A DNA stretch of 64,000 bases from NCBI RefSeq assembly GCF_003918875.1, contig NW_025765403.1:1674001-1738000 (forward strand), written 5' to 3'. How positions within the stretch are numbered: position 1 is the first letter of the stretch; the number at the start of each line of letters is the position of its first letter. Position numbers and translations under genes: made by a program. The DNA comes from Haliotis rubra. Lineage: Eukaryota. The notes under the pieces are model-generated. The model was not told the origin of the DNA. It searched no databases and was given only the letters and a program-made list of their open reading frames with translations. Positions 3,721 through 32,000 of this stretch are shown in pieces.

Positions 3721-4242
3721 TCTAAGTGAAGAAGCACTATAGACGTTTGGACAAAAGCGGACACACACCCACGCACACACGCATGCACGCGCACGCACGC
3801 ACACTCACGCACGCACACACGTCGATATATAATTGGAAGAATATGTCATGAGAACATGCTTTTTGTGACAGTATGATTATCAGAGCATGAAAAAGCAGCC
3901 GTCGGTAGGATAAAAATGCTTGTTGGATACATGACAAATATAAACAATCTGAAATGATATTTGATTCTCCGACAAAAATTAAATCTCGCACTTTGTTTTG
4001 TTTAAAAGATAGGACGAAACGAATGAAACGGCAATATCTTGATTAAATGGTTTAAACATTCATATTTTGTTTCCGCAACTTGTAAACGGACTGGATTGGT
4101 AAACAAGTATTGCGATTTACATAAATACTGCTCAAGTAATACACAAATTAGAAACGAAAAGAGAATTAGTACAATCAAGGTAGAAATATATAGCCAATAA
4201 TAGATAATACCAGTGAATATGATGGAGGTGTGTCGGGTATGA

Positions 4243-4404
4243 CTGACTGAGTTTGGTTTTACGCCGCTTTTAGCGATATTCAAGCAACATCATGGCGGGG
4301 AACACCAGAAATGGGCTTCGTACATTGTACCCATGTGGGGATTCGAACGTGGATCTTCGGCGTGACGAGCCAACGCTTTAACAACTAGGCTACCCCACCG
4401 CCCC
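4243..4404 (-). mobile_element. SINE family A
   Basis: Same consensus. TSD TGTCGGGTATGA at 4231-4242 and 4405-4416. Confidence 0.9.
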
Positions 4405-4824
4405 TGTCGGGTATGAGGACTAAGAGGAATAAGCTACATATTCGTATATATTTCAGGGATCAATATAAAATCTTGTTGCCTGTTCAATGAAATCATGAAC
4501 AGATGCCAAAATCTTAACGTCTACGGTTTCTGCGGAATTTCCATGCAGTACAGAAGTGAGGTTAGATTCCACGGTATAAAAGTATGAATTTGATCTCGGA
4601 TGTTATATTTCTTACAGAGGTAATAAGTATTATCCTTACGTATTGAACCACAGGAACACTGAGATCTGTCTGTCGCACACGTGGGCATGCAAGTAGCCAC
4701 ATCCTGAGTCGAGAGTGAAAGATTTGACACATTCTTGATTCATAGTCCAGATCAAAATGTGGCGTACCCGTTGTTACTGATAAGTCGGTTGCTATGGAAC
4801 CTGCATTCGTTACAGAATATATCA

Positions 4825-5076
4825 AACTCGTGAAGGTCCGGGTTAGAATATTGATCTTCAGTAACCCATGCTTGTCGTATAGGCGACTAACGGGATCGAG
4901 TGGTCAGGCTCGCTGACTTGGTTGACACATGACATCGGTTCCCAATTACACAGATCGATGCTCATGCTGTTGCTCACTGGATTGTCTGGCCCAGACTCGA
5001 TTATTTACAGACTGCCGCCATATAGCTGGAATATTGCTGAATGCGACGTAAACCTAAACTCACTCACTCACTCACT
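4825..5076 (+). mobile_element. SINE family C, full length
   Basis: Head CGTGAAGGTCCGGGTTAGAAT..., GTCGTA(T)AGGCGACTAA and an (ACTC)n tail. TSD GAATATATCA at 4815-4824 and 5077-5086. Confidence 0.9.
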
Positions 5077-6154
5077 GAATATATCATGTCATATTTTCTT
5101 TTTGTGAAGTTTTCATTTTATTCGCTCTTAAATCATTGGCAGTTATGCACAGTTGCTAAGTTACATGACATGTTAGGCTTATCTCTGAAAGTGGGAATCA
5201 AACTTATATTTGGCACTGTTATTTCCAGACCATTCAGCATGTCCAACTGAAGTATTGCAATCGCTAGAAGAGAATTCTTGGCTTCATCAATAAATGCAAT
5301 GAAATAACTGTGTAAAACGCAGTTAGGAAAAACAATTAACTTAAACTAACCTATTCTTACTGATACTGTGGATAACCCAAAAAGGTAATTCTACAGATAA
5401 AATGGACATAAACGTGACTGTTGGCACGAAGGTATGAATCGGCCGGGGTCTGAGGTAAGTACATGTACATAACACCTGTCCCTGTGACCTCAAACCGGCC
5501 CGTGTATTTTGACAGGTGCAAATGTCATCTGATTTGGGCCGGTCTCCAAATATTTCTGCTGTTGCTATTGACAATTAAAAAGGGTTGTCAGGATAGCAGT
5601 TATGATAATCATGTACCACAGTATACGTTATATTTGGTATTGCGCGTTTTTTATTTACACCTCCAGAACTTAATATGTTTTGGGGTTGAGTCCCATCTGG
5701 GATTCGAACCCACATTCTCAGAGTGAGGCACATAATCGCCAGCGTGAAGTGTACTGTATTATATATGCTTGGAAGTATGATGCAATAATTAAAAGCTATG
5801 AAACAGAATGGTTATTAGAAGGTTGTGATTTTTCTAAATCAGGTAGTATTTTTGTTCTGTGTGCCTTATCACCCTTCTTCAACGTTGTCCATTATTATTT
5901 TATTCTCCTGTTTTTAGAAGACCTCTTTCTCATTTCTATTTATCATACCGTAAAGTCGTTGTTCTGGAAGAGCTCGACCTTAGGCTAATCGGTTATACGA
6001 TCCGTGAAGATCCGGGTTAGAATTGATCTTCAGTAACCCATGCTTGTGGTAAGAGGCCACCACTGGGATCCACGGCAAACGGGCTGCCCAATTCGGTCTA
6101 AAGACCAGCAATTGGGTGCTGTGGACCACTATGCCCCCGGGGCCACACGGGGAT

Positions 6155-6213
6155 TGAAGAGCGCTTTGCGTCACCCAGCACCCACCAGGAGGAAGCGGCT
6201 CTTCACGGGTGCC
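6155..6213 (-). ncRNA. Candidate minimal (P4-less) HDV-like self-cleaving ribozyme
   Basis: The minus strand reads GGCACCC-G-UGAAGAGCC-GCU-UCCUCCU-GGU-GGGUGCU-GG-GUGACG-CAAA-GC-GCUCUUCA. This gives a 7-bp P1 with a G1.U wobble, a UCCUC L3, GG for P1.1, a C-AAA J4/2 and an 8-9-bp P2. Folded by eye only. Confidence 0.55.
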
Positions 6214-6484
6214 CTGAAAAATATGATATCTATGAAAAATATGATTTTGCCCAGCCACGTTGCCTCTGATCCATTACATTGCTTCACACACACACGCATG
6301 CACGCACGCAAGAACACGCCGCTTTGCATGCACGCAAACAAAGCACACACATAAATACGTGTGTAAACCAATGTGAACGAAAGAAACCCGTTTTCGGACA
6401 CAGATGACATGAAAGCACCTGTCGGTATTGACACAAATCTACTTTGCGACATGAGACAGGACACGCCACCGACACGTCCAGCCC

Positions 6485-6522
6485 GATAACAGCAGTAGGT
6501 CACCCGGGATGTCTCTGACCTT
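6485..6522 (+). promoter_or_regulatory. Putative proximal promoter motifs of paralogue 1 (GATA site, AGGTCA/TGACCTT nuclear-receptor half-sites)
   Basis: GATAAC at 6485, AGGTCA at 6497-6502 and TGACCTT at 6516-6522. GATAACAGC and TGACCTTACTATG are conserved at the same distance upstream of paralogue 2 (14041-14084). Confidence 0.45.
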
Positions 6523-6611
6523 ACTATGACAGGGACTGCTTAGAGTGTCGGCTTTGTCAAGGGTGAGGTGACAGGTGGCTTGGTACACACAGTCTTCCTG
6601 AAGTTATAGCA

Positions 6612-9600
6612 ATGAGTAACGGTAAAGAGGGTGACCACAACGGGAAGGTTGGGAACTCAGAAACACATCATCCAGATGAGGATAACAACTTACTGCCTAT
6701 AGACAGAGGATGGGCTTGGGCGATACTGGGAGGTACGTATACATTGGTTGTAAGTGTATAGAGCTCGAACATAATCCTGTATTAACTTTCCGGTGCTGCA
6801 CATTTGTTTTGAGTTTAGGATATAATATGTTTCTCGACAGTCGAGCGTATTTCCTCAAAGCATTGCCCATTCTCATACAAATAGAAGCGACATGACCCTT
6901 TCCACATCCACAGAAAATCTCTGCTACAAGCAGAGCCGATTGTACAATTGTGACTATATCATGAGTATATATTTGTTTAAGCAGTATTACAGCTGTACGA
7001 GACCGCCTCCGTGGTGTAGTGGTTAGAGCGTCCGCCCGGAGAGCGGAAGGTCGCGGGTTCGATCCCCGACCACGTCATACCAAAAGACGTTAAAATATGG
7101 TACTTGTTGGTCCCTGCCTGGCGCTCGGCATTAATGGGTACAACAAGGACTGGTCGGCTCGGAGTCAGAAAACTGTGTCTGAGTTGGGTATTCATGCTTC
7201 ACTGCGGCATGGTATCTCAGTCTGGGCTAGTACAAGCAGCCGCACATACACACACACACATACACACGCATGCACGTCGTCATATGAGCGAAATATTCTC
7301 AAGCACGACGTAAAACCCAACTTCACCTCACCTCACCTGAATGGTTATTCCTACTTGCTAACAGATATGATATGTCAGGTTATCCTGCATCGATGTCAGA
7401 GACGTGCTTTTACACCAAATTCTGTAACAATCCAAATACAGACTAGTGTGGTGTCTTGCTTTATCGCTATACTCACTAGTTCAGCCACTGACTGACGAAC
7501 TCAGTTTCAATCATTCTGCTGTGGTAGTGAACCATGCGCTCTCTCGTTTACCCCTTTCTTTCAACAATATTCTTATAACGTCAATACCTATTGTAAACTC
7601 AAAGTGTTAACAATATTAACTCAATTTCACCTCACCTCACCTCACAGCTGTACGATGTTGTCTGTAAACAAACCAGACAATCCAGTGGTTGTATGACACA
7701 TTCGTAAAGTATCTGTTTCAGGATGTTTCCTGAATGCTATGCTAATGGGTGGATACAACCAATCTATGGCGCTGTTCTTTGTGGAATACCTTGAAATGTT
7801 TGGTGCATCTACAACAAGGACAACCCTAATCCTTGGGGTGAAAGCGATGTCCTACAGCCTAATGTGTAAGCAGACCAATCTTAACTAATCTGAAAAAAAG
7901 TTTAATCTTGAGATTAATGCGTCCACAAATTAATGCCACTACTGACCATAAGCCAAAAATGCTGCTCAATATATACGTGACGCTTACTTGTCAAATTATG
8001 TTTCTACTCCGTGTTTTCACTGGTGTATACGTACTTACACATTTCTACATACGGAATGCATAAGACAATTTATCCCGTGTGTCCTTCATGATGAACCTAT
8101 ATCAACCGGGTTGATATTAAATTGCACCAAGGAAGTGCAAATGAGGACTAAATGTGTATTTCTGACGAGGTAATGTATCCTGTGATTCAACATGGAGATA
8201 AAACATATTTGTAATAGGAAGGGCGCGATTGATATTTGGAAATCTCCGGTTCAACTGCCAGTCATGCTATATTTAGGTAATTCATCAAATGTGTGATTGT
8301 GTCTCTATCTTCAGAATGCAAGATCACCTATAACATTTTCGAATGTATAAATGTTATAAAATAAACGGATGCACAGCTATATCCTGTTCCTGGTACCTTA
8401 CACTGAATTGTAATTTGGCTGAAGGTTCTTTATATAACCAGTGTGATTATATTATATAGATATGTTTATGCTCTGTGATGGCTTTACTCTTCTAGCACTG
8501 GTTACTATGCACGTTGTGTTGGAGTTTCTCGGGACGAGGAAGACAGTCATGTTGGGCGGACTCCTCACAGTGTTAGCTATTCTCTCAGCCACCTTCGCGC
8601 CCAACATAATGGTCATCATATGTGTTCACAGCGTTCTTTTAGGTATGTGCTTATGCAAGTCTTGTGTCCACTAAATAGTAGGAAAGAAAAACAGTTCCTT
8701 TAAAATAGGTCCTCTGATAACTGCTTAGATGGTGTTCTCGAAAGGCTCCCAAATGGACGGACAGTGCACAATGATAGCGTTTGCCAAACTCCAAGGTACT
8801 GTACGCCTATAGGTCTTAGGAGAGTAGACAGTTCTTGGAACCTCCATGAAATGAGGACTTGTATCATGTCCTAATCTTGATTTTGCATCTTTACGAACTA
8901 AACTCTAACAGATCCATCAGATAGCATAAAGTGACAGTGTCTGTGTGTTCCAATATTATATCGTCACCAAGACAATATATCCCATACCACAATCCGTACA
9001 AGTATACAATGACAACACCTATTCTTCTGTTTCAGGAATGGGGAATTCAATGATACATGCACCAGCTTTAGTGCTGATTGGAAAATACTTCAAGAAAAGA
9101 CGAGGCCTGGCTACAACAGCTGCAAGTTCAGCGATGAGTTTAGCAAGTGTATTCCCAATATTTTCTCAATATCTGCTTGATGAATATGGCGTTCGGGGAA
9201 CAACACTCATATACACTGGTCTTACTATGAATATATGGGTAGGGGCATCCCTGTTTCGACCTCTTCACTTCTATGCAAGAAGAGTGAAACCCGAACGCAT
9301 GCAGGAAGATACAGTGGACAGTGGTGGTTCTGAAGTAAGAAAGGACATCAGGAATAATGATGCTACTTGGTCTGACAATGGACACACGAAACACACAGAG
9401 AACATTCACAATGGAAGTGTCAGGAGTTGTAACGTTGTTGTTAATGACACCTTCAATGGAGTCCTTGATCCCCAAAGCGACGGTTCCTTCAGGAAAAGAG
9501 CATACTCCGAAGGTTCTAAAAGGACCATAAAGCAGTCTGATTCAGAGTCTGACAAACTGGTATACACAAGTAACCCAGACCTCGTGAGTCTCCCAATAAT

Positions 9601-10816
9601 CACACCCACACTTTTGGATGCAGTTTCGAAGGAAATACGTGTGGACGACCCAAAATCATCAATCGCGAGAAATATTGGGAAGGTTTTCAAAGCTTTTGAC
9701 TTTTCTTTATTTAAGAATCCAATGTTTCTTCTTATTATGGTATTCTGTCAGTTCGGTGTTGTTGTGAGACACGTCCCAACCTACCTCCCGGCACAGATGA
9801 AGGAAATGGGATACAGTCAGTCTGATGCAGCGTTTCTGCTGCTCATCTCTGGAATTCTGGACTTCTTTTGTCGACTGTTTTATGGTTTTGTAGCTGATCT
9901 TGGATATCTTCGTGTCTGTCAAATCATGGCTTTTGGCCTTTTGATCGTAGGAGTGGCATCACAGTTAATAATGTTCTACACCACATATCCTCTTCTTGTA
10001 GCCTACTGTGTAGTGGTTGGCGTCTTCGGATGTGCCTTCCCGTGCCTTCTTCCATTGGTAATAGTGGATTTCATGGGGGTCGACTGTATGGGAAAGACTC
10101 TAGGATTTACAGCGTTATTCCAAGGATTTGCAGTTGCACTGACCCATCCAATTTTAGGTAACAGACCTTACAAATTACCTTCTTATCATTTCATTTTGAC
10201 GATTTCTAGTCGACATCCATTGTCGGACAGTGGAAACCCATAATATCAAACCCTGTCATGTCCAATAAGCATGTAGCAATCCAAAGGACAATTCTAACAA
10301 GGCGCCGCAATCCGCTGTACAAAGTAGGACACCTATGATCGTGGTTTCGTATCTGAGAGTCTTACTGCTTATTGTTCTGGCTTCGTTAGCTCCATTTGTA
10401 CGGTTTTTGGTTTCATAAATGCAGTAAACATCCAATACTTCTAGGTTTCTTCTTACACGAAGTTGACACTCCCGGATGTAAATGAATTAATCTGAAAAGC
10501 GGCGTGAAGCCAAACGCATTCCTAACAAAATATAATGTACTTGTGTGTGCAATCTACATGAACATCACGTCATGTCATTATTAGACCGTGTTGAACAAGT
10601 CATGTCTTCATTTTTTCTAGTAGACAGGTGTGTGTGTTTTCAGGTGCATTACGTGATTTGACCGGATCCTATCTACCCTGTTTCCAGTACCTTGGTGCGA
10701 CATCTTTGCTTGCCGCAGCACAGTTGCTATGCGAGCCTCTTGTACGACATTATACAGCAAAAACCACGGAAGGATCACTTTCAAAGGATGAAGAATGTCT
10801 GGAACCACTGAAATAG
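6612..10816 (+). CDS. SLC16: SLC16/MCT-family monocarboxylate transporter, paralogue 1 (5 exons, ~568 aa)
   Basis: Exons 6612-6732, 7722-7865, 8496-8642, 9036-10157 and 10644-10816 have GT-AG boundaries and total 1707 nt in frame. Motifs: LPIDRGWAW (MCT N-terminal motif variant), YFKKRRGLA, FDFSLFKNP, TM8 DFFCR, GALRDLTGSY. Confidence 0.93.
7001..7643 (+). mobile_element. tRNA-derived SINE family B (Meta/MESC-like core) plus a ~305-nt 3' extension
   Basis: tRNA-like head with A/B boxes and core ACCAAAAGACGTTAAAATATGGTACTTG. (CACCT)n tails at ~7321-7338 and ~7626-7643. TSD ACAGCTGTACGA at 6989-7000 and 7644-7655. Confidence 0.85.
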
Positions 10817-12805
10817 GCAACTGAAGTTCTCATGCATATGCTCAGTGTTTACTTGCCCTAAGTGTATGTGCTATAAAACCCAACAATTTGGATCCTATGC
10901 TCAAAGTGTTAATTCACTCACTCAACATACAACATCAACAGGTTTGAAGGGTAAAATGGCTAAACCTTAATAGTAAACCTGGTAGTGTTGTTTTATGTTA
11001 ATCAAATAACAGTTTGTTTATCAGTTCAACGAAAGAAAAGCAACCTGGCAGTTAATGATTACGGTCAAAGCTCAGTTAATGTGCCTCAGTTGTTCTATTC
11101 AAATGCCGTGTATCAAAATTGGAAATTGGCACTAGTAAGTAGATCATACTCCCACTTGAAGTGATGCCATATTTATGTGCATGTGATTATTTCTGTGATT
11201 ATGACTGTGATTTGATCGTGCACAAATATTGGTGCCAGGATCCGATCGTTGGTGTTTTGGGTCAATTTAATGTTTGCATCACAACCAAACTGGTATGCAA
11301 GTTGCAGTAGGCATGGTCAATAGGCATGGTCATGTAGGTGACAGTATGTCAGATGTACAAAGCGGTGGTAATCCAGCACACGTCACCCACTGGCTCAGAA
11401 CACGGTATTCTACACTTGTACATAATGTGTCCTGAATTACAGACACTGTGTCGAAACAACCGAAACACCATGACTATATAATGATGGGCCACATCAAATG
11501 GTGCCATAGTATGCCATGTAGCGTTGGACATAATACCTAAGATTTGCATTTGAAAGTTTGCCTTGACACTTTTGTTAATAACGTCCCTTTATTAATTCAT
11601 TTGCATAAATGAGCTATCAGGAATAATGGCAATAAAAATGCAAGAGAAACAGCTTTATAGAAACCTCTTTATATGATTATTTCGGTTTCGGTTAACATCA
11701 TCACAAACATTGTCCTAGTTTGAATTGTTTTACTGTTAACCTGCACGGTTTCCTTTCTTTGGATGGTAGACTACTTGAGGGTTATTTCTGGAAGTATGTG
11801 ATGCGTCTGCAACTCCCGATGAACTACAGCAATGAACTGCAGCAAGATGCGGAGTAGAATGTGGCCAATCTGATATAAATAATTAGAAAGCTGACATCCA
11901 GTGAATCCTACCACTACCTTACACAGTGACGTCACTTAGTCTACATACCCAGCCTTGTTCCCAGTACAGACGGGTAACTCGTGTTCATAAACATGGTAAT
12001 TAAAAACTCTGTGAATTGAAGATCCACTCATCTTGACTCCTAACGCTATGGTTAACTCGGTTATCAGTTTTTAATTGTGTATGAGAAAATCATTGTAAAA
12101 TACAATTATGACCTTCTTCCTTATCGGCTTGTGAAAACCGTTATATGTAGACAAGCCGATTCACATATATCACTTACATAATGTTGTGACATTACTTCAT
12201 TGTCACGCTGCAGCTGATCCCATTAGGTCTACAGTTACCAAACTGCTCGTACGATCGTGGCTACACACAAATAGTTCACTATTGATTCATTTTTAGGAAA
12301 TTATATTTATAAATATTTAACCTCTAAAAGTATTCTTACAAATTTACTACTCAGGCGTACAACTTTTGAAATAATGATCCGATTGTGACCATTTATAGCT
12401 CATTTTGTAGGGAAATCATCTCGCTTTTGATCCGTAGGCCTCGACGGGGCCTTACAAAATAGTTTACGTGGTGAAATCTAACTTAGATTGAGGAGGGGGT
12501 GGTTCCGTCGTTACATCCCTTTCCTTTTATATAGTACTAGGGTAGGGTATATTTACCTATATGCCTTTCTAACGCTGTTTCTAAGCGTGACACGCCCCTG
12601 TGGGTATTGACACACTGTACTGGTGGGAGACGACATAACATATCTGACTGGGGTATCAATGTCAACGCTGAACTGCGGCAAGAGATATCAGCGGGCCTAC
12701 CCTGGAGACTCACATATGTACTTACCCACCTGTACTATGTACATATACCAGCACTCTGCACATCCACACATGTGCAGTGCAGACGATGTATATATATTTC
12801 AAGCA

Positions 12806-12882: not shown

Positions 12883-14168
12883 GTGGACGTTTTTCTATAA
12901 ATGTGAATTGAAATGTAAATTGGTGAAGATGAAACTGGTTGACAATGAAATATGCTCTTTTGGAATGATGTGAATGAGAACTTATGCCGTGTATACTGGA
13001 AATGTGATGGAACCAAAACCTTTTGGAATGACCTTGGGATTGGATTATTCAAAACATACAAGAACTGCAACTGACAAAATTCCTTGTTTGGTCTGGTATT
13101 TTAGAAAAAGACCCACTATTAAATCATATAACCCTCTCTGCAATAAGACACATTTACATTTGCACTTGTCTAACATGACTTCGTCTAACTTGTGATATTT
13201 TACATGTAATAATTGGAGAACCCAGTTGTATCAAAAATGTACACCTGCTTACATATTTCTAGATGCACTGTATAATTACTCTGTATACCTGATTTGGGGA
13301 TAAAAAACCCAACAAAACCAAAAACATCGAGATTTTCATGAAGGAACTCCAAAGGAGATAAACATCACACCAAACCCCAACAAGTGACACCCGCGTTGGT
13401 TAACAGCTGGCAAAGCAATTTGAACACAGTCATCATCAACGTTTCGTTAATTATTATTATATTTTGAACATTTACACTCTTCCATAAAGTATGAGCAGCT
13501 AAATGTAACAGTCATTCTTCCTCCAGCAAAGGACACTCTGATTAGATAATGAAGTAGGTTAAAAAAGTCCAATGGTAGCCTCTGTGGTTTTATCTACCGA
13601 ATTCCACAATTGCGATTTCGAGAGATCGTATATACCGCTCTGATATCTCTGACGTCAGACTGCAATATATGTATTGTATAGTTGTACAGACACCAGTACA
13701 GTATACATGGGACGTGTAAGAGTAACGTAAAACTTCACTTTCTAGTCCACAGAGTAATTGAATCGACTTGGTATATTCACGCCTATCTACGTACTGCAGT
13801 ACTGTAGAATTCATTCGTGTTTTACATTATCTGTCATCTGCCCTGTATTTCTGAACCTGCATTTATGTCTCCTTTACGTACGTGCAAAGATATCGACATA
13901 CCTACCTAACTGTCTACCTACCGATGTACCTACCAATGAAAACTGACGTGAATGAATGATACCAGTTTTCGAATTCAGATGGCACGAGAAAACCTCAATG
14001 CTATCACAAGTTGACCTTACGTCATAAGATAGGACACTCCGATAACAGCCGTAGATCACATGGGCTGCATTTGACCTTACTATGCCAATGACAGACTTGC
14101 TGTGCATATTATTATGTAACATAGATAACGAGTGTATTACTACACACAGTCGTTTTGAAGTTATGGCA

Positions 14169-17100
14169 ATGAGTAATGATCATGGAGATGACGACAAAGG
14201 GAAGAGTGTGAAAACTGAAGTAAAACCTCCAGAAGATGATAACACAATACTACCTATAGACAGAGGATGGGCTTGGGCGATACTCGGAGGTACGTATACA
14301 TTCATGAATACTTACAGGTGCGTATAACTCAAACATATGTACTGATGAAAGTACACATGAAAGTACAGTTGTTCCTTAATCTTTCCCAGGTTTATTCGTA
14401 TGCTTTGTATCGAGGTATGTGTGAAAATCTGGAAATAAATAAAGGGTCACTCAGACAAACAGATCCTTCAGATAGCATAAGGTGTCACTGTATACTCCGG
14501 TAGCATATCGTCTCCTAGGCAATGCGAACAATATCACCCATACAACATACATATATACGCATGTCGACAGTGACACCTTCCATTCTTTTGTTTTAGCCAT
14601 AATAAATGATCATTCTGCGTTTGTGTTTTGTTTAGCACGTTATGTATGGTGTTTGGCAGTCCAGCGTATGTCCACATGAGAATTTCCATCGTCCCTCACA
14701 AAAAAATAACAATGGTAAAAAATATATTTATTTAAGGGTGTTTCCTGAATGCTCTGCTGACGGGTGGATACAACCGATCCATGGCGCTGTTCTTTGTGGA
14801 ATACCTTGAGATGTTTGGTGCATCTACCACGGAGACAACCCTTGTCCTTGGGGTGAAAGCGATGACCATCAGCCTAATGTGTAAGCAGACCGTTCGTAGC
14901 TAATGACCAGCCATAAACAAAAATACGAAAAGCTATATGTTTCTCGTGCCTTAAATTGTAAAGTTCTGTTAATGATCTGTGTTCAGTACATGTCCATAAC
15001 AACGGTTATATACGACATACATAAAATAGTTTATATTGCGTGTCCTTGTAGCACATATTATATTTGGGATTATGACATCGCATATTCATTGTGTGTCCCT
15101 AATTAAAGCTGAGCAGTATCACTTTGCACAAAGGAAGTGAAACCAGAATAATTGCGTATTTCATACTTGTTAATGTATATATTGCGATTTAACACGAGGG
15201 TACAACATATCTGGAGAGGGATACGGCAAATTCTCTTCCACTTGTCATGTAATATGTTTGACATTCATCAGTGCGTCTTTTTTATCTTGATCTTCGGGAT
15301 ACAAGAGCACCTATAGCCTTTTCGAATGTATAAATGCTTCATGTATCGAACAGAAAATAGAAACAGACACACTTATATCTTACTGCTGCATCCAAGTGAC
15401 TAGAATACCAAATTACAAAATACATCGAATTCCCATTTTACTAAACGTTAGTCTAAAATTCCGTGTGATTTTATTATATTAATATGATCGTGTACTGTGA
15501 TGGTTTTACACTTTTAGCACCGATTGCTATGAACGTTGTGCTGGAGTTCCTCGGGACGAGGAAGACAGTCTTGTTGGGCGGACTCCTCAATGTGTTGGGT
15601 ATTCTCGCAGCCACCTTTGCGCCGAACATACTGGTCCTTATATGTGTTCACAGTGTTCTTACAGGTACGTCCCCATGCCAGTTTTTGTCCACTAAATAGC
15701 AGGAGAAGAAAAACGCTTCCTTTAAAATAGGTCATCTGATAACTTACTGTCTAATGCTAGCATAGATGCGTTTTCGAAACGCGTCCAGAAGGAAGGTAGT
15801 GCATAGTTATAGCGGTTGGCAATTTCTAAGATACTGTTGGATTATTGTAGATACGGCCATTCTTGGAACTCCTGGCATGATATGATTGGATGGGAATCAC
15901 GCCCTAATCTCGATGGTGGCAATTATATTTTGTCCATGCGAACCACACTCAGACAAACAGATCCTACAGATAGCATAAGGTGGCACTGTATGCTCCGGTA
16001 TCATATCGTCTCCCAGGCAATGCCAACAATATCACCCATACCACATTCATACATACGCATGTCGACAGTGACACTTTCCATTCTTTTGTTTTAGGAATGG
16101 GCAATTCAATGGCACACGCGCCTGGTATTGTGCTGATTGGAAAATACTTCAAGAAAAGACGAGGCCTGGCTACAACAGCTGCGGGTTCAGCGATGAGTGT
16201 AGCAGGTGTATTCCCAATACTTACTCAATATCTGCTGGACGAATATGGGATACGAGGAACAATGCTTATATACACTGGTCTAACTATGAATATATTTGTA
16301 GGGGCATCCCTATATCGACCTATTCACTTCTATGAAAGAAGAGTGAAACCCGATCGCATGCAGGAAGATACAGTGGACAGTGGTGGTGTTGAAGTGAGAG
16401 CGGTCATCAGGGATGAAGATGCTACTGGAGCACACCATGGCGGAGAGGACATTCACGGTGGAAGTACCAGGAGTTGTAACGTTGTTGTTAATGATACCTG
16501 CAATGGATTCCTGGATCCCCAAATCGACGACGATTCCTTCAGGAAAAGAGCACACTCTGAAGGTTCTAAAAGAATCATAAAGCAGTCTGTTTCCGAATTT
16601 GAAAAACTGGTATACACAAGTAACCCAGACCTCGTGAGTCTCCCAATAATCACACCCAAACAGTTGGATGCAGCTGAAAGGGACATACGTGTCGATGATC
16701 GAAATCACAGAAAATCCGCAATCGCTAGAAATATTCGGAAGGTTTTCAAAGCATTTGACTTTTCTTTATTTAAGAATCCAATGTTTCTTCTCATTGTGGC
16801 ATTTTGTTTGTTCGGTGTTGTTGTGAGACACATTGTAACCTACCTCCCGGCACAGATGAAGGAAATGGGACTCAGTCAGTCTGATGCAGCGTTTCTGCTG
16901 CTTATCTCTGGAATTCTGGACTTCTTTTGTCGACTGTTTTATGGTTTTGTAGCTGATCTTGGATATCTTCGTGTCTCTCGAATCATGGCTTTTGGCCTTT
17001 TGATCGTAGGAGTGGCATCACAGTTTATAATGTTTTACACCACATATCCTCTTCTTGTAGCCTACTGTGTAGTGGTTGGCGTCTTCGGATGTGCCGTCCC

Positions 17101-17903
17101 GTGCCTTTTTCCATTGCTAATAGTGGATTTTATGGGAATCGACTGTATGGCAAAGACTATAGGATTTACAGTGTTATTCCAAGGATTTTCAGCTGCACTG
17201 ACACATCCAATTTTAGGTAACAGACCTTACATATTACCCTGTTATCATTTCATTTTCACTCTTTCGAGTCTCCATTGATTGATTGTTCCTTCGGACTATG
17301 GAAACCCAAAACGTGAAATAGACATGTAGCAATGAAAACGTGACACGGTAAAGTTATCTGCCAATCCGCTTCACAAATTAGAGGGTAGGATACATATTAC
17401 AGTGGGTTTGTAGCTGAGATTCTGACTGATTTTGGCTCTGGCTTTGTCAGCCCCATTTTCATGCTTGTTGGATTAAGAAAAGCAGTAAACATCTAATACG
17501 TGGGGTTTCCTCTTACACGAAGTTGATACACCCTGATATAACTGAATGAATGTGAAAAGCAGAATATAATCTACCTGTGTCAGCAATATACATGAAACTT
17601 TGGTCAAAGATATTTGAAGTACCTTCAGAGCATCACGTCACATCAGTATTAGACCAATAATCATGAACAAGTCATGTCTTCATTTTTTAGTGAATACGTA
17701 TGTTTGTTTCAGGTGCATTACGTGACTTGAGCGGATCCTATATACCCTGTTTCCAGTACCTTGGTGTGTCATCCTTCTTTTCCGCAGCACTGCTGCTATG
17801 TGAGCCTCTTGTACGACGTTATGCAGCAAAACACCCACAAGCATCACCATCAAAGGATGAGGAATGTCTTGAACCACTGAAAGAGGCAAATGAAGTGAAG
17901 TGA
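14169..17903 (+). CDS. SLC16: SLC16/MCT-family transporter, paralogue 2 (5 exons, ~574 aa), close duplicate of paralogue 1
   Basis: Exons 14169-14289 (alternative in-frame ATG at 14163), 14737-14880, 15518-15664, 16095-17216 and 17713-17903 total 1725 nt in frame. Same motifs as paralogue 1. The exon 2 acceptor is a weak A/T-rich AAG. Confidence 0.92.
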
Positions 17904-23950: not shown

Positions 23951-24454
23951 TTAAATGTAGTATATATATATAATGCTATTACTATGTATACCCTACATAC
24001 ATATATACCGTACACGTCCAGACCTCAACACTAGTCATTAGTTTCGAGTACACACTATTAGTTACACTGTGTTTTGATACGGTGTACAGGACTGTAAGAC
24101 CCTTGTAAATTCCGTATTTCCTGAGACGCAGCCAAAGGGTCTAACAATCCCGTACACCCTTTCAAAACAGTGTGACGAATTTATTACCCTTAAGATTTTT
24201 TATTTTGCTTATGTTTAAACAACAACATTCAATCATCGGCAGAATGAGACACAAAACGTTTTGCCATGATTTTCTTGATAAAAATTATCGACTTTGAGGT
24301 TTTGTTAAACGACAAGTGAAATACAGAAACATTTTATTATTGGATACTTCGGATACATTTATTGACACAAACAAATAAGAAATTATGGCAACAATGTTAT
24401 TATTCTGTTTATTCTGTATACTCATAATTGTATACGTCAGCTCTAAACTTTCGA

Positions 24455-25715
24455 GCAGAAGCAAATGCCATATTAACAGCTCTTAAATATATTAATAAAC
24501 ATCGTGAATATAAACAATACATAATCTTCTCTGATTGTCTTTCGTGCCTTCAGGCTATTAAAAATCATTCTTGTAAACATCCACTTTTAATTTAATTATT
24601 GAATTGTATAATGATCTTGCTACTGGCCAATGCGACATCGTCTTTTGTTGGTTACCCAGCCAATGCGACATCGTCTTTTGTTGGTTACCCAGCCACGTTG
24701 GCATTTCTGGGAACACAATGGCCGATCTTGCTGCCAAGGCAGCACTCAACAAATCTGTGACACCACTTCTTATCCCATACTCTGATTACAAAGCTAGCAT
24801 TAGAACCTACATCCGTGATCTGATGCAGAAGAAGTGGGACACCCAAGTAGGTATCAATAAATTACATGCAATAAAACCCTATATCGGTTACACCTACTTG
24901 GGTTGTCAGTCCAGATTTGAAGAGGTCATTATGCGACGATGTCGCATTGGCCATACTAGATATGCCCACGAATATTTATTGAGAGGCGAAGATCCTCCGT
25001 TTTGTATCCCTTGTGATGAAAGAATCACGGTCAAGCATGTCTTGCTTGACTGTGTTGAATATTCCATCACAAGGGATAACTATTTCAAATCACGAACAAT
25101 GAAGGATCTTTTTAATAATATAAGTTCTCATTTAATTATTGCATTTTTAAAAGAATTAAATTTGTTAAAGTGATTTGTAAATAGATATTTTTTTATAATT
25201 GGAAGTTTAAATTTGTAACTCAGATTGTTAGTGGCAGTATCCTCAAGGGAGGTTAAAGTACTGTATAAATATTGTCCTCCCGAGAGAGTACGTAAGTCTC
25301 AAAATATTCACAGTAACTTTAAACTCTCCACTTTTTTAATCGTAGGATATGTGTATTTTTAATGTATGGCTATGTTTGTCTCAATTGCTAACAGCTGAAG
25401 GGATGGTGTAAATCCAGCTGGGGTCCATGCAGGTAGCAAATGTGCTATAAGTCCCCATGGTCCCTAGTATGGTGATCTACCTTCAGTTGTTGGTAATCTA
25501 TAGCCTGTTTTAACATTGTATTGTCATGTATGGTTAAACTGTTTTAGGTTTAATCACTAGTTTTAAATTCATATATGTGATAGTGTAGTTGTTTTACTGT
25601 CCTTTGTTGACAGGTTTTTATATTTTATCATAAATAACTATGTATAACAATTAATTGTTCTCGTCACGATATGGCTGAAATATTGCCGATGTGACGATAC
25701 ATTTTAACTCGCTCA
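24455..25715 (+). mobile_element. 5'-truncated I-group (Nimb/Ingi/Loa-like) LINE: RNase H C-terminus, CCHC knuckle and 3' UTR
   Basis: AEANAILTAL, IIFSDCLSCLQAI, WLPSHVGISGNTMAD, RCRIGHT and CIPCDERITVKHVLLDC, with a tail ending AACTCGCTCA. Near-perfect TSD CTCTAAA(C/A)TTTCGA at 24441-24454 and 25716-25729. Contains a 33-bp internal duplication and stop codons. Confidence 0.88.
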
Positions 25716-26081: not shown

Positions 26082-29000
26082 ATGGAGCCAAACAGCACAC
26101 ACGATGCCTATGGGCTCACTAACAGACAGGGCAGAGATCATCAGTTGGGTCTTTCACAAGTTGAAGACAGTTGTAACGAACTGGATAGCAAGGAAATGCA
26201 GGCAGTGGATAGGAATTGTGATAGTACCATGCCTGTCATCATTTGCCACAGTGCTGCCATACAACCGGAGCCTGGAAGAAAACACGTGGAAACAGAGGTG
26301 ATGGAGAACACTTGTGATGATGAAGATGGCGGTGATGATGATGGTGATGATGATGAGGAGGAGGAGGAGGATGGTGATGACATGACTGAAACTAAGAAAT
26401 TGACCGCAACATTAAATAAACAGCCCGGTGAAATCAAAGAGGGAGAAGAAGATGAAGAAGACAATAATTTGCCGATTGATCGTGGATGGGCCTGGGTGGT
26501 ACTTTTCGGTAAATTTGAGCTTTTTACCTTGAAGGATGATTGTTGAAACATGGGGAATCTTGACCCCCATGACCCCATGATTATACTGTTTTCTAAACAT
26601 TNNNNNNNNNNNNNNNNNNNNNNNNNNNNNNNNNNNNNNNNNNNNNNNNNNNNNNNNNNNNNNNNNNNNNNNNNNNNNNNNNNNNNNNNNNNNNNNNNNN
26701 NNNNNNNNNNNNNNNNNNNNNNNNNNNNNNNNNNNNNNNNNNNNNNNNNNNNNNNNNNNNNNTTAGCAATTTTCCAGCAATATCAGAAATGGGCACCACG
26801 CATTTTGCCCATGTGGGGAATCGAACCCGGGTCTTCGACGTGACGAGCTAACGCTTTTGCCACAGGCAAAGTCACACAGACGCACACACCTAACAGCAGA
26901 TGGTGTATATATACCTACGTGTGTGTATGAAACTAATGAATACGGGTTTTAGAGATTATTTACTCATTGACAATGACATAAGAATTCCAATAAGCTAAAT
27001 CCTATCTCCTTCAACTAGGTTGCTTTCTGATCGTGTTGCTGATGGCCGGCTACAGCAAGGGCATCGCTATTGTGTTCGTGGAATACATTGAAGTATTTGA
27101 CGCACCTGCGTCAAAAACCACTCTCTTATTTTGGGTTATAACAGGCACATACAGCATTGCATGTAAGTATCATATAATCATTTTATAAGTTTTACTAAAA
27201 CAAAGGTAAGCATGGTGGCTAAGCGATCGGGTTATGACCGAAAGCCTTGGTTTTATCCCCAAGAACCAGACAATGCTTGTAACTTCTGTCTCATGCATCA
27301 TACCTTCCACACGGTTAACTTCTTCGAAACAAACTTCGGTGGCACAGACAATCTGCAATGGAATTGGTTGGCTGGTTGTTGTTTAACGCCGCACTCAGCC
27401 GCTATATGGCGGCGGTCTATAAATAATCGAGTCTGAACCAGACAAACCAGTCGTCAACAGCACGCACATCGATCTACACCATTGGGATACAATGACGTGT
27501 GTCAACCAAGTCAGCGAGGATGACCACCCGATCCCATAAGTCGCCTTTCATGACAAGCATGGGTTACTGAAGATCAATTCTAACACGGATCTTCACGGGT
27601 CTGATTGCAGAGAGGTAGTTATGCATCCAGAGAAGCTCCAAGTGTTTTCTGACGCAGTGAATAAAGAATATATTACAGTAAAGAGTCAGAGGAAGTTAGA
27701 AATATCGAGTCTGAACCAGACAATTCTGTGATCAACAGCAATAGCATCGCTATTCGCAACTGGGATACAACGATATGTGTCAGCGAGCCTGACCACCCGA
27801 TCCCGTTAGTTTCCTCTTACGGCAAGCATGGGTTACTGAAGGTGAATTCTAACACGGATCAAGGGTTGCAATTGGAACACAGATAATTAACGCCGAACAC
27901 TCATTAGAGTTATTTAACATCATTCCGACTTAGTACCTAACGAGGACAGCGTAGGAACTCAACTGACAAGACCTCCAGAAAGCCGTTTCAGGTTGATTTG
28001 TGGCAATGTTTTACTGTTGTAATGATCTTCCACTTGAACTGCTTTAAAACTACTATCGGCTGGAATAACGAAATGATGCATTTATTGATTTCATCATAAT
28101 ACGTTAAAATAATGTTGATGTGTATGTGTGCCAGATTTCACCACATACTCACCTCCTGTTAGGTACGTAAATCCCAGACCATGCAAAGTAAATTTAGACT
28201 CTACATATTTTACTCGTAGAATATGTGCATTTTTAATGTATGGCTTCATTTGTCGAAATTGCAATTTTCCTACAACCGCCAGCGGCTGAAGGGATGATGT
28301 AAATCCAGCTAGGGCCCATGCAGGAAGCACATGTACTGCAAGCCACCATATTCCCTAGTATGGTGATCTGCCTTCAGTTGTTGTCAATCTATACTCCGTT
28401 TTTTATATTGTATGGTCATCTACATGTATAGATAAAATAGTTTAGATTTAATTACTAGTCATCAATTTATTCCTGTGATATTCTAGTTGTTTACTGTTCT
28501 TTGTATACAGGTAAGTATATTATATAAGTTTGTTTTTATTCATTTATACATGTACAACTTTCTTAGTCACGATATGGCTGAAATACTGCCGATGTGACTT
28601 TAAATTTTAACTCACTCACTCATCCCTTGTTAGATTTAGTCTCATCCAGGTTCCAGCTACAGTTGTACATATTTGTACTGACTCCTTGTTAGTTTTAGTC
28701 TCATCCAGGTTCCAGCTACAGTTGTACATATTTGTACTGACTCCTTGTTAGACTTAGTCTCATCCAGGTTCCAGCTACAGTTGTACATATTTGTACTGAC
28801 TCCTTGTTAGATTTAGTCTCATCCAGGTTCCAGCTACAGTTGTACATATTTGTACTGACTCCTTGTTAGATTAAGTCTCATCCAGGTTCCAGCTACAGTT
28901 GTACATATTTGTACTGACTCCTTGTTAGTTTTAGTCTCATCCAGGTTCCAGCTACAGTTGTACATATTTGTACTGACTCCTTGACTCCTTGTTAGATTTA

Positions 29001-32000
29001 GTCTCATCCAGGTTCCAGCTACAGTTGTACATATTTGTACTGACTCCTTGTTAGGTTTAGTCTCATCCTGGTTCCAGCTACAGTTGTACATATTTGTACT
29101 GACTCCTTGTTAGATTTAGTCTCATCCTGGTTCCAGCTACAGTTGTACATATTTGTACTGACGCATTTACAAAAATATGTGTCCATGCCGTATGTATTTA
29201 TATGTGTGTAAAATATGCTTGTTTCAGCTGTGCTTACAATGCACATCCTTCTTGGAGCAATAGGTATCAGGAAGACTGTCATGTTGGGGGTAATGCTGAA
29301 TGTCATTGCAATGGTCACAGCCATATTTGCAAAAAGTATCACCTATCTTATCTGCACCCACAGTCTTCTGATGGGTACGTACAGTCACAAGACCGGTTTA
29401 CTCAGGGAATGTACATTACACTCTGAAGTAGAGGGTAGTGTTCAAATATATTATCAGAATAGTAACATTTCTACCTTCTGTGATATTTGGTTAAGAATTT
29501 TGGGTATGTTTTCACATATATTCCCATAGGTACGTACATGCGATATGATATGATATGATACATATGATAGGAATTAAAAAGTTTGGTTATCAAACTCCGT
29601 TGATAATGTAATAGTCCGTCATAATTATTCACATATAATCGTTTAAACCATCTGCATACGTATGAAAAATATACGCTCAATGTCCATGTACAAATCCGCA
29701 TGGGACCCGTGAAGATCCGGGTTAGAATATTTATCTTCAGTAACCCATGCTTGTCGTAAGATGCGACTAACGGGATCGGCTCCCAATTGCGCAGATCGAT
29801 ACTCATGCTGTTGATCACTGGATTATCTGGTCCAGATTCGATTATATACAGACCGCCGCCATATAGCTGGAATATTGCTGGGTGCGGCGTAAAACTAAAT
29901 CCACTCACTCACTCACAAATCCGCATGGATATTTAATTATCTATCAAATAGCTGTATAGATAGATCTGTGTTTATGAGGAATGTAGGCCACTCTTACAGT
30001 CTAAGTGTCTTTTCAGTACTTAGTGAGACCTCCTTCCCCTGCAATACAAGACTGAATGCGGCTAGGTACACTACCGATCACAGTTTGTAGGAAATCGTGT
30101 GACAGCGTATCCCAATATTCGACCACTTCTTTCTTCATATCCTCAAAATTTCTAAGTCCTTTTTGGTTAATTCTATCCTTAAATAGTCCCCACACAAGAT
30201 CTGGGCTGCAGCTGTGCCAGTCTAACACTTGAACATTTTCGTCCGACTAACCACTGTTGTATGTAGCCCGCAGTGTGTTGTGGGTAGTTATCATGCTGGA
30301 AAATCCAGTTATCTTCATATAGTGTTCGGGCCGTTGGAAGGAGGTGACCATTTAAGATGTCAACATATCGTTCCTTCGTCAAATTTCCAGTGAAAATACA
30401 CAACGGGGTCACTCCACGTGATGATATCCTACCCCACATGTGAAATTTCGGGCTATGTTTTGGGCGTTGGTATATAGGTTTCACGGTATCTTTTGTCCAA
30501 GTTTTCACACATTTAAGAAAAAGACAGACAGAGCTTTCATAAGGAAAGAAAACAACATTATCTCAATCTTGATTTGCGAGAGGCCTACATCAGTTTAAAG
30601 TCATTCGTTTTGTGCATCTTTCATCATTGGTGAAGGCATTCCGCGCTTTTTTCACCCAGTTAAGTCTTTCAAATTATTGTCTAAGGGTTTCATTACATAC
30701 CCGAGGGCTTCCTCTATTAATCATTCTCAACGCTTTTCAATTTTCCCCTACTCACAATCTGACCAAGTTGCCGGTGATCCCGTAGTACTAGGCTTCCTTG
30801 GACTCCCTGTGCTCAATCCCAACTCATGGCTGATTATTTTTCAAAGTTCTGAAAACTGTAGACAGAAGAATGTCATATGTTTACCAGCTATTTCTTTTGC
30901 ATTAGTCGCACCCCTTTCAAAATCAGCTTTCTCTCTTCTGCTGTCAAATCTGTCATGTCAAAGAAGGACACTGTCTGGTACACCAGGGGAGATTACTCTT
31001 GATGCAGTAGGGTTTATTCTTAAGCCTACAAGAGTTGCCTCCCATACTGGGTACCTTACTACAGATTGTAACCTATTTTACAATTCTAGTATCAGTACTA
31101 GGAAACAAAGATTTTCTCAATAATTTCTGGGAAAATAATAAATATAAAAAGATGAGTCCAGATAACCCTTCCTGTCAAAACGCCTTTATCTGCGCATGAT
31201 CGTTCGCCGTTCAACTGCTCTTAGGGTGTACAATGAAAACTAAGTGTAGTCAAAGGTGACGTATAACGTGGACTCATCTTTTATATATATGGTGATCATA
31301 TCCTGCCACACAAATTTGTACTAAAAAGACCCCCAAAACCACACCCATAAATGCATGCATGATCTTGTCATATATTTGCCTGATCCATCTAGCGATCATA
31401 TGGCACATATTGAAAATGTCCATGGTTCTATGTTCAATATCATTAGAGATATGTATTCAAAGACAAAGGCTAGTGTTAAGCTAAACAATTTAAATGTTTC
31501 GGAAAATTTTGATTCTTTGAGTGGGGTTCGGCAAGGTTGCATTTTAAGTCCTCTTCTATTTGCGTTGTTTGTTAACCAGTTGTATACGGAAATAACTACT
31601 TGTGGTGACAGGGGCGTATTTATTGACCCATAGTTTATGGAATTGTATTTGCTACTGTATACAGATGATTTATGTTTGTTTGCAGATTTTGCCATCAGTC
31701 CTCAGAGGAAGATCAATGTATTACTACAGTTTTGTAAAAAATGGGGCTTGTCTGTAAATTCTGAGAAAACAAAGGTGCTAGTCTTTAGAAATGGTGGTAA
31801 ATTAAGGGGTATGAATCATGGTACATGTACTTTGGTGATCATAAGTTAAATCGTTTCTACATATTATAATTATTTGGATTTATTGTTTTCAAATAGATTT
31901 AGATGGTCTAAAGCGGTTCAAAATCTGGTATATAAAGCGAATAGCGCCTTGTGCTCAGTTAAGGTTTTTGGTAGGAGACTAAAAACTATTTCTCCAACTA

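What the first reader, a model, noticed from the sequence alone, without database searches (positions are those of the whole stretch)
6155..6213. Compact HDV-like ribozyme fold, antisense and ~400 nt upstream of MCT paralogue 1
Seen: the minus strand maps onto the HDV double pseudoknot. P1 GGCACCC (6213-6207) pairs with GGGUGCU (6183-6177), including the hallmark G1.U wobble. P2 UGAAGAGC(C) pairs with G(C)GCUCUUCA (6164-6155). P3 is GCU/GGU, L3 is UCCUCCU (HDV has UCCUCGCU), GG follows P1 for P1.1, and the candidate catalytic C at 6168 is followed by AAA. P4 is replaced by ~6 nt. Established: HDV-like ribozymes process the 5' ends of several non-LTR retrotransposon clades (R2, RTE, Ingi/L1Tc, Loa), and P4 is dispensable. 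Inference: this is the 5' end of a retroelement, possibly the I-group LINE whose 3' ends are common here, and it could cleave divergent transcripts from the MCT promoter. Caveats: P3 has two wobbles, and GCUU/AAGC can extend P2 into an inactive fold.
Basis: partly seen in the sequence, partly recalled or inferred. Interest (0 to 1): 0.8.

Follow-up and report, generated by a model that had tools for sequence, protein, structure and literature searches.

The report
Decayed ribozyme head of abalone LINE
The 59 bases are a mutated, truncated copy of a very small hepatitis-delta-type self-cutting RNA that forms the exact first bases of an abundant abalone jumping gene (a LINE); the motif is real, but this kind of ribozyme was already reported in abalone and this copy is a dead fragment.

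Summary
Minus strand 6213->6155 has P1 (7 bp, G1.U), P2 (8 bp), P3, P1.1 and a C in J4/2. It is the only hit of a pseudoknot descriptor in the window; random windows give 0.06.

The main interpretation also holds. All 28 related copies first fetched start exactly at the base matching G6213, with unrelated upstream DNA. Full-length copies continue into ORF1 and an ORF2 with endonuclease, reverse transcriptase and RNase H. The core 31-mer occurs about 3,276 times in this genome, which is Haliotis rubra by its protein matches.

On the family consensus the three best Rfam matches of 4,227 families are all HDV-type ribozymes, in register from G1, with P4 reduced to one base. All score below their gathering thresholds.

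The same 25-base core occurs in 64 metagenome stretches, many in phage-like tRNA arrays. There, 33 different P1 helices and matching P2 helices show the fold co-varies.

The window copy is a relic. It is 144 bases of LINE head joined to a 72-base SINE tail, with five private core changes, and its Rfam score falls from 28.8 to 12.9 bits. Cleavage was not testable, and the MCT-promoter idea is untested.

A P4-less HDV-like ribozyme in abalone was reported in 2011. This scan has noted the same family on other pieces of this genome.

The parts
6155..6213 (-). Decayed copy of a P4-less HDV-like ribozyme. P1 is 6213-6207 with 6183-6177. P2 is 6205-6198 with 6162-6155. P3 is 6196-6194 with 6186-6184. 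L3 is 6193-6187. The P1.1 G's are 6176-6175. The candidate catalytic C is 6168. The predicted cleavage site is 5' of G6213.
   Evidence: Sequence. Sole descriptor hit in the window. Rfam HDV models rank first and second on this copy, at 12.9 and 12.7 bits. The family consensus scores 28.8 and 21.2 bits.
6071..6213 (-). 5' fragment, about 144 bases, of an RNase H-bearing LINE. It starts at the element's first base.
   Evidence: BLAST to 28 genomic copies that all begin at the base matching 6213. Matches run to 6121 or 6070. L031 and L033 continue into ORF1, endonuclease and RT.
5999..6070 (-). 3' terminal ~72 bases of an abundant SINE-like repeat, abutting the LINE fragment. The same tail ends the full SINE copy at 5074-4826.
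   Evidence: Own-genome search: 1,685 first-look candidates, with matches starting sharply at 6070 and ending at about 5999. No other locus spans the junction. Sequences compared.
24454..25422 (+). 3' end of a copy of the same LINE family (5'-truncated).
   Evidence: 83% identity to L031:4882-5787 over 972 bases. 3' termini read.
6606..10828 (+). Monocarboxylate transporter paralogue 1, a neighbour and not part of the element. Exons lie at about 6606-6740, 7721-7864, 8486-8647, 9020-10159 and 10643-10828.
   Evidence: tblastn of Haliotis MCT-like proteins P0121, P0122 and P0124.

Best explanation
The stretch is a dead, mutated copy of a minimal (P4-less) HDV-like self-cleaving ribozyme. That ribozyme forms nucleotides 1-59 of an abundant abalone LINE with ORF1 and an ORF2 carrying endonuclease, RT and RNase H.

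Inferred mechanism, by analogy with R2, RTE, Baggins and L1Tc: in working elements the RNA is read through from upstream DNA, or started by a promoter. The double pseudoknot (P1, P1.1, P2, P3) folds, and the J4/2 cytosine catalyses scission immediately 5' of G1. The LINE RNA therefore begins at its own first base, and reverse transcription to that end gives copies with a uniform 5' terminus.

Shown here: the fold elements, the match to HDV covariance models, the exact coincidence of G1 with the family's 5' boundary, the copy number, and co-variation of P1 and P2 in other carriers of the same core.

Not shown: cleavage itself.

The window copy is 144 bases of head joined to a SINE tail. One possible origin is a template switch during reverse transcription. 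It has five private core substitutions and is probably weak or inactive.
For: -: 28 copies with unrelated upstream flanks all begin at GGCACCC, the base matching window G6213.
- the core 31-mer with up to 2 mismatches occurs 1,667 + 1,609 times in the genome; the reversed control occurs 0 times.
- at least 97 copies have an identical 62-base head.
- ribozyme, ORF1, endonuclease and RT lie in line in L031 and L033.
- copies with intact ORF2 (open frames of about 1,230 aa) are 79-80% identical to L031 at DNA level, and their upstream parts run collinear from about +388. In one such copy, L075, Pfam finds endonuclease, RT and RNase H in the 1,222-aa ORF2.
- on contig C107 a ribozyme core sits 387 bases upstream of a 91% match to that 5' UTR.
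- the top three of 4,227 Rfam families are RF02682 (28.8 bits, E 4e-4 for that 101-base search), RF00094 (21.2 bits) and drz-agam-1. All are aligned from G1, with P4 reduced to 1 base.
- 64 metagenome stretches carry the same 25 specified core bases. Of 46 unique sequences, 35 have a perfect 7-bp P1 (33 distinct helices; 6.7% in shuffles). Of those 35, 31 have an anchored P2 of at least 5 bp (7% in shuffles).
- 6 of 7 P1 pairs change on both sides.
- the first 250 bases are 92-99% conserved among lineages that are 60-80% alike downstream.
- (PMC3774820) reports an abalone HDV-like ribozyme with 5 nt instead of P4, and states that P4 is not needed for HDV activity.
- natural P4-less HDV-like ribozymes cleave in vitro.
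Against: - No cleavage assay or 5'-end data. The public runs were available only as contigs labelled 'RNA?' (a guess), and some contigs run across the junction.
- All Rfam scores are below the gathering thresholds (44 and 50 bits). 28.8 bits would not be significant in a blind 1.4-Gb search.
- Within the LINE family the ribozyme is almost invariant, so the family itself gives no co-variation.
- Copies were chosen by similarity to the head, which inflates conservation of bases 1-62.
- P1 pairing in alignment A2 is 100% by construction, because I kept only sequences that had a P1.
- The P1 control shuffled only the 3' strand of P1.
- No HDV-like motif was found in three related LINE loci of other species. 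Those copies may be 5'-truncated.
Confidence: 0.85

Rival explanations
1. The conserved 5' head is not a ribozyme. It would be an internal promoter or a protein- or RT-recognition element whose sequence happens to fit the HDV descriptor, and the uniform 5' end would reflect transcription initiation at base 1.
For: The whole first ~250 bases are conserved, not only the ribozyme. In L1Tc the same 77 bases act as both promoter and ribozyme (abstract of PMC3383444), so a promoter role is plausible. Rfam scores are below gathering.
Against: All three best Rfam hits are HDV families, in register with base 1. The same 25-base core in unrelated carriers (phage-like tRNA arrays, and another LINE with a distant RT) keeps P1 and P2 through different sequences. 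A promoter would not require that. A promoter role would not exclude a ribozyme.
Confidence: 0.07
2. The window copy is still catalytically active and has been co-opted to cut divergent (antisense) transcripts from the MCT paralogue 1 promoter.
For: It lies about 393 bases upstream of the MCT start codon on the opposite strand. P1, P2, P1.1 and the candidate C are intact, and both P3 changes keep wobble pairs.
Against: Five private substitutions. G26C hits the L3 G, and A42G hits the GGGUAA stretch; both positions are upper-case (conserved) in both Rfam consensus lines. The score drops from 28.8 to 12.9 bits. The exact variant occurs only here and in one duplicate contig. The G26C form is 12 of about 3,276 heads. 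PMC3774820 calls the L3 G important and links its absence to a ribozyme with no detectable self-cleavage. There is no expression evidence.
Confidence: 0.06
3. Pure chance: a random sequence in the window that happens to satisfy the HDV descriptor.
For: A descriptor hit is expected in about 6% of random 64-kb windows.
Against: It is a member of a family of about 3,276 copies whose 5' boundary is exactly G1, and whose consensus fits the HDV models better than this copy does.
Confidence: 0.01

Closest known systems
HDV-like ribozyme of the abalone Haliotis discus (Webb & Luptak 2011, RNA Biol 8:719, as cited in PMC3774820)
   Same: Host genus; HDV-like double pseudoknot; a few bases in place of the P4 stem ('only 5 nucleotides instead of a P4 stem').
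   Different: I could not read the 2011 paper. Sequence identity with that ribozyme, and whether its LINE context was described, are therefore unverified. The genome here is H. rubra by protein names.
Minimal HDV-like ribozymes (drz-Mtgn) and theta ribozymes of gut phages (Riccitelli 2014; Kienbeck et al., bioRxiv 10.1101/2023.06.13.544163)
   Same: No P4. In the 64 metagenome stretches the core is letter for letter the same over 25 specified bases: ACC UCCUCGU GGU, then the 7-base P1 3' strand, then GGGUAA, one base, then GCUAA. Many of those stretches sit in tRNA arrays, as described for theta ribozymes. I did not compare them with published drz-Mtgn or theta sequences.
   Different: The carrier and role differ. 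Here it is the 5' end of an animal LINE with thousands of genomic copies, not a phage tRNA trailer. The preprint states that minimal forms were detected exclusively in gut phage genomes.
HDV-like ribozymes at the 5' ends of R2, R4/Dong, RTE, Baggins (LOA) and L1Tc/ingi retrotransposons
   Same: Position at the element's first base, and the inferred role of releasing the element RNA from a co-transcript (PMC3774820; abstracts of PMC3185411 and PMC4035085). Silkmoth R2 ribozymes also lack P4.
   Different: A different LINE lineage (RNase H-bearing, mollusc, labelled 'jockey' by NCBI). The ribozyme is much smaller (59 bases), and its J1/2 is 1 base rather than the hundreds seen in silkmoth R2.

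Membership tests
HDV-like self-cleaving ribozymes | P1 helix (6-7 bp) starting at the cleavage site, usually with a G1.U pair | tested here: met
   7 bp with G1.U, in both the window copy and the consensus.
HDV-like self-cleaving ribozymes | P2 pseudoknot pairing the strand after P1 with the 3' end | tested here: met
   8 bp, 6205-6198 with 6162-6155. P2 co-varies in other carriers of the core: 31 of 35 against 7% in controls.
HDV-like self-cleaving ribozymes | 3-bp P3 closed by a 7-8 nt L3, and a two-pair P1.1 between L3 and the bases after P1 | tested here: met
   The consensus has ACC/GGU, L3 UCCUCGU, and CC with GG. The window copy has two wobble pairs in P3 and a C in place of the L3 G.
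HDV-like self-cleaving ribozymes | Catalytic C in J4/2, aligned with C75 of HDV | tested here: met
   Both Rfam models align their GCUAA with the consensus GCUAA. The matching base in the window is C6168.
HDV-like self-cleaving ribozymes | Score at or above an Rfam gathering threshold | tested here: not met
   Consensus: 28.8 bits against 44 (RF02682) and 21.2 against 50 (RF00094). Window copy: 12.9 and 12.7 bits. Both models expect a P4 helix, which is absent here.
HDV-like self-cleaving ribozymes | Co-variation supporting the helices | tested here: inconclusive
   None within the LINE family, whose head is 98% identical. Strong in other carriers of the same core: 33 distinct P1 helices. That supports the class, and supports this element only through its shared core.
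HDV-like self-cleaving ribozymes | Site-specific self-scission giving a 5'-OH product | not testable with these tools
   Only contigs of runs labelled 'RNA?' were available, and they cannot show ends.
Minimal (P4-less) HDV-like / theta ribozymes | P4 domain absent | tested here: met
   One base lies between GGGUAA and GCUAA. The same spacing is seen in nearly all of the 64 metagenome matches.
Minimal (P4-less) HDV-like / theta ribozymes | Phage context next to tRNA genes (theta subfamily) | tested here: not met
   Here it heads a LINE in an animal genome. It works like a theta ribozyme but is not one by context.
I-group (RNase H-bearing) non-LTR retrotransposons | ORF2 with AP-endonuclease, RT and a C-terminal RNase H | tested here: met
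   L075 ORF2: Exo_endo_phos at 1-207, RVT_1 at 489-740, RNase_H at 957-1079. It is 79-80% identical at DNA level to ribozyme-headed L031.
I-group (RNase H-bearing) non-LTR retrotransposons | Placement in a named clade (I, Nimb, Ingi, LOA, R1) by RT phylogeny | not tested
   No reference RT set was at hand. Only the generic NCBI label 'mobile element jockey' was seen.

The most novel reading that the evidence does not exclude
The same 25-base catalytic core is shared by an abalone LINE, a second eukaryotic LINE with only about 23% RT identity, and ribozymes in phage-like tRNA arrays. This could reflect horizontal movement of one ribozyme module between phages and animal retrotransposons, rather than convergence on one minimal solution. 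If so, minimal HDV-like ribozymes would not be confined to gut phages as has been stated.
Probability: 0.12. Interest if true: 0.6.

Novelty: new member of a known kind. Interest (0 to 1): 0.3.

Why it matters
It adds a well-documented case to a known theme: LINEs use HDV-like ribozymes to set their 5' ends. This case is the smallest, P4-less form, in a mollusc, on an RNase H-bearing LINE with about 3,300 heads and intact, apparently young copies.

It also shows that the core found in phage-like tRNA arrays occurs letter for letter in animal retrotransposons. That matters for anyone annotating ribozymes or asking where minimal HDV-like ribozymes come from.

For this locus the practical message is modest: the copy upstream of the MCT gene is a decayed fragment.

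Tried and rejected
- Rfam over 4000-9000 at E up to 10 gave no HDV hit. The hit appears only when about 100 bases are searched, because filters are looser then.
- Nested MFE folding is uninformative for a pseudoknot: z-scores 0.14, -0.36 and -0.19.
- Covariance model R1 run on the genome returned only near-identical copies, because only 150 candidates are scored. It gave no diverged lineages.
- R1, Rfam and my descriptor found no ribozyme in three related LINE loci of other species, L065-L067. Loci L144 and L145 were fetched but not analysed.
- Read laying served contigs only. They show the 5' boundary at base 101 of L031 in three coded organisms, and some contigs cross it. They carry no information on ends.
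The link rests on collinearity and on one coordinate coincidence on contig C107.
- Webb 2009, Ruminski 2011 and Webb & Luptak 2011 are not held.
- I rejected the idea that the window's three P3/L3 changes mark a subfamily. The exact variant exists only here and on duplicate contig C1192.
- No target-site duplication was seen around 6213 and 5999.

Full report
**Observation**

- P1 is GGCACCC with GGGUGCU, 7 bp, with G1.U.
- P2 is UGAAGAGC with GCUCUUCA, 8 bp.
- P3 is GCU with GGU (G.U, C-G, U.G).
- L3 is UCCUCCU.
- GG follows P1 and can form P1.1.
- C6168 is followed by AAA.
- Only six bases stand between P1.1 and that C, so there is no P4.

A pseudoknot-aware descriptor that I wrote finds this single site on both strands of the window. 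In 400 first-order Markov random windows it finds 0.06 sites per window. The descriptor was written after I had seen the site, so by itself the motif is only mildly improbable.

**What it belongs to**

A search of the window's own genome with 6260-6140 (minus strand) gave matches that almost all begin at query base 46-48, which is G6213. When 28 copies were cut out with their flanks, every one starts at GGCACCC and the 40 bases upstream are unrelated. The core 31-mer with up to two mismatches occurs 1,667 + 1,609 times in the 1.38-Gb genome, and the reversed control occurs 0 times. At least 97 places carry an identical 62-base head.

Downstream of the head, copies such as L031 and L033 run for about 5.7 kb. 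They pass through a 301-aa ORF1, an endonuclease fragment and reverse transcriptase.

The genome also holds many copies with an uninterrupted ORF2, with open frames of about 1,230 aa. They are 79-80% identical to L031 at DNA level. One of them, L075, has a 341-aa ORF1 and a 1,222-aa ORF2 in which Pfam finds endonuclease, RT and RNase H. The upstream parts of three of these intact loci (L075, L076, L078) are collinear with ribozyme-headed loci from about base +388. On contig C107 a ribozyme core lies 387 bases upstream of a 91% match to that 5' UTR.

The element is therefore an RNase H-bearing LINE. A 3' end of the same family lies at 24454-25422 in the window.

**Is the head a ribozyme?**

On the consensus-like copy (L031:90-190) the three best of 4,227 Rfam families are all HDV-type:
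- RF02682: 28.8 bits, E 4e-4 for that search.
- RF00094: 21.2 bits.
- drz-agam-1: 12 bits.

All three are aligned in register from G1. GGGUAA matches the models' GGCAA or GGGCAA, and GCUAA matches their GCUAA, which holds the catalytic C. A single base stands where P4 would be. All scores are below the gathering thresholds, and the models expect a P4 helix.

The consensus has a fully canonical P3 (ACC with GGU) and L3 UCCUCGU.

The family is 98% identical over these 62 bases, so it offers no co-variation. I therefore searched metagenome contigs for the core with P1 left free: 25 specified bases and a 1-20 base gap at P4.
- 64 stretches matched, nearly all with a one-base gap.
- Of 46 unique sequences, 35 have a perfect 7-bp complement to the free P1 strand at the right distance. 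These make 33 distinct helices, 31 of them starting with G. After shuffling the P1 3' strand, 6.7% do.
- Of those 35, 31 have an anchored P2 of at least 5 bp, against 7% after shuffling the downstream bases.
- On a gapless 13-sequence alignment, 6 of 7 P1 pairs change on both sides. Pairing there is 100% by construction, because I kept only sequences with a P1.

Many of these contigs hold tRNA arrays with the ribozyme on the same strand, in one case 3 bases after a tRNA. That matches the published theta ribozymes, which are P4-less HDV-like ribozymes of gut phages that cleave in vitro.

One group of contigs (the WLWD and WLWI records) carries the core at a (GT)n-flanked 5' junction, about 2.7 kb upstream of an RT fragment. 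That RT is only about 23% identical to the abalone RT. It is a second LINE with the same core and different P1 and P2.

**Conservation**

Among 16 long loci, a few of which are the same genomic copy fetched twice, the first 250 bases are 92-99% identical. The rest is 57-88% identical, mostly 60-80%. Bases 1-62 are inflated by how the copies were chosen. Bases 100-250 are not, so something beyond the ribozyme is also conserved.

Contigs of public runs from three coded organisms cover the head and break off exactly at base 1. Those runs were served as contigs only and their RNA label is a guess, so they say nothing about cleavage.

**The window copy**

LINE homology runs from 6213 to 6070 only. 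From 6070 to 5999 the sequence is the 3' tail of an unrelated, very abundant SINE-like repeat, and no other locus shares the junction. LINE sequence does not resume below 5999. No target-site duplication is evident. A template switch from SINE RNA to LINE RNA during reverse transcription would give this arrangement, but that is inference.

The copy differs from the consensus at A18G, C20U, G26C, A42G and U47A. The combination is found only here and on contig C1192, which holds a duplicate. C1192 is probably a haplotig.
- The two P3 changes keep wobble pairs.
- G26C replaces the L3 G, which PMC3774820 calls important.
- G26C occurs in only 12 of about 3,276 heads.
- The Rfam scores fall to 12.9 and 12.7 bits.

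I judge this copy weak or dead.

It sits about 393 bases upstream of, and antisense to, the first coding exon of MCT paralogue 1. The idea that it cuts divergent promoter transcripts is untested.

**Host and prior knowledge**

The MCT-like ORF matches proteins named Haliotis rubra at 98% and 80% identity. Those proteins sit on contigs of 1,914,083 and 68,323 bases, and 68,323 is the length of C1192. The genome is therefore an abalone, most likely H. rubra.

[quoted passage not shown] I could not open that paper.

Earlier notes of this scan describe the same family on other pieces of this genome. I reached the 2011 citation before reading those notes. My own tests agree with them on the fold, the LINE context and the shared theta-like core. 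My count of heads, about 3,276, is higher than one note's 'about 1000'.

**Verdict**

This is a real feature. The family-level interpretation is supported, the kind is known, and this copy is a relic. Interest is low to moderate.

Noticed in passing
window 6606-10828, 14163-17900, 27018-34813, 45998-48704 (+) and 63470-58561 (-): Five monocarboxylate-transporter-like paralogues in one 64-kb window, four on the + strand and one on the - strand. Each has about five coding exons. The second is 93-100% identical, exon by exon, to an H. rubra protein on the 68-kb contig C1192.
   Followed up: partly
L031:163-350 (LINE bases 63-250): The 5' UTR just after the ribozyme is 92-96% conserved among lineages that are 60-80% alike further on. 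It starts with a CCCCCG...CGGGGG hairpin. Its function is unknown.
   Followed up: partly
window 5999-6070 and 4826-5074 (-): An abundant SINE-like repeat of about 250 bases, preceded by (GTGA)n at 5074. The search with its 72-base tail region gave at least 1,685 first-look candidates. Weak tRNA-model hits at 7013-7077 (+) and 4333-4399 (-) may be SINE heads.
   Followed up: partly
G000:C1192:37371-37491 and 56115-56225: The 68-kb contig C1192 holds a 100% identical copy of window 6140-6260, and a 95% copy of the SINE-tail region about 19 kb away. It is probably a haplotig or a recent segmental duplicate of the MCT cluster.
   Followed up: no
L075 (G000:C280:171540-178208) and the places listed: LINE copies with intact ORF1 and ORF2, and 300-base 5' UTR stretches that are 99-100% identical at many loci. 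The family looks recently active.
   Followed up: partly
L080, L092, L100, L101, L113, L122, L143 (metagenome contigs): P4-less HDV-like ribozymes with the same core sit inside dense tRNA arrays of up to 20 tRNAs, including one tRNA with a CUA (suppressor) anticodon in L113. This is the context described for theta ribozymes.
   Followed up: partly
L104:5440-5520 and related WLWD/WLWI contigs (L091, L098, L106, L107, L114, L116, L117, L128, L142): A second ribozyme-headed retroelement of unknown eukaryotic host. Its copies are 5'-truncated at different points, and most join a GT-rich or (GT)n tract at the junction. In L104 an RT fragment lies about 2.7 kb downstream.
   Followed up: partly
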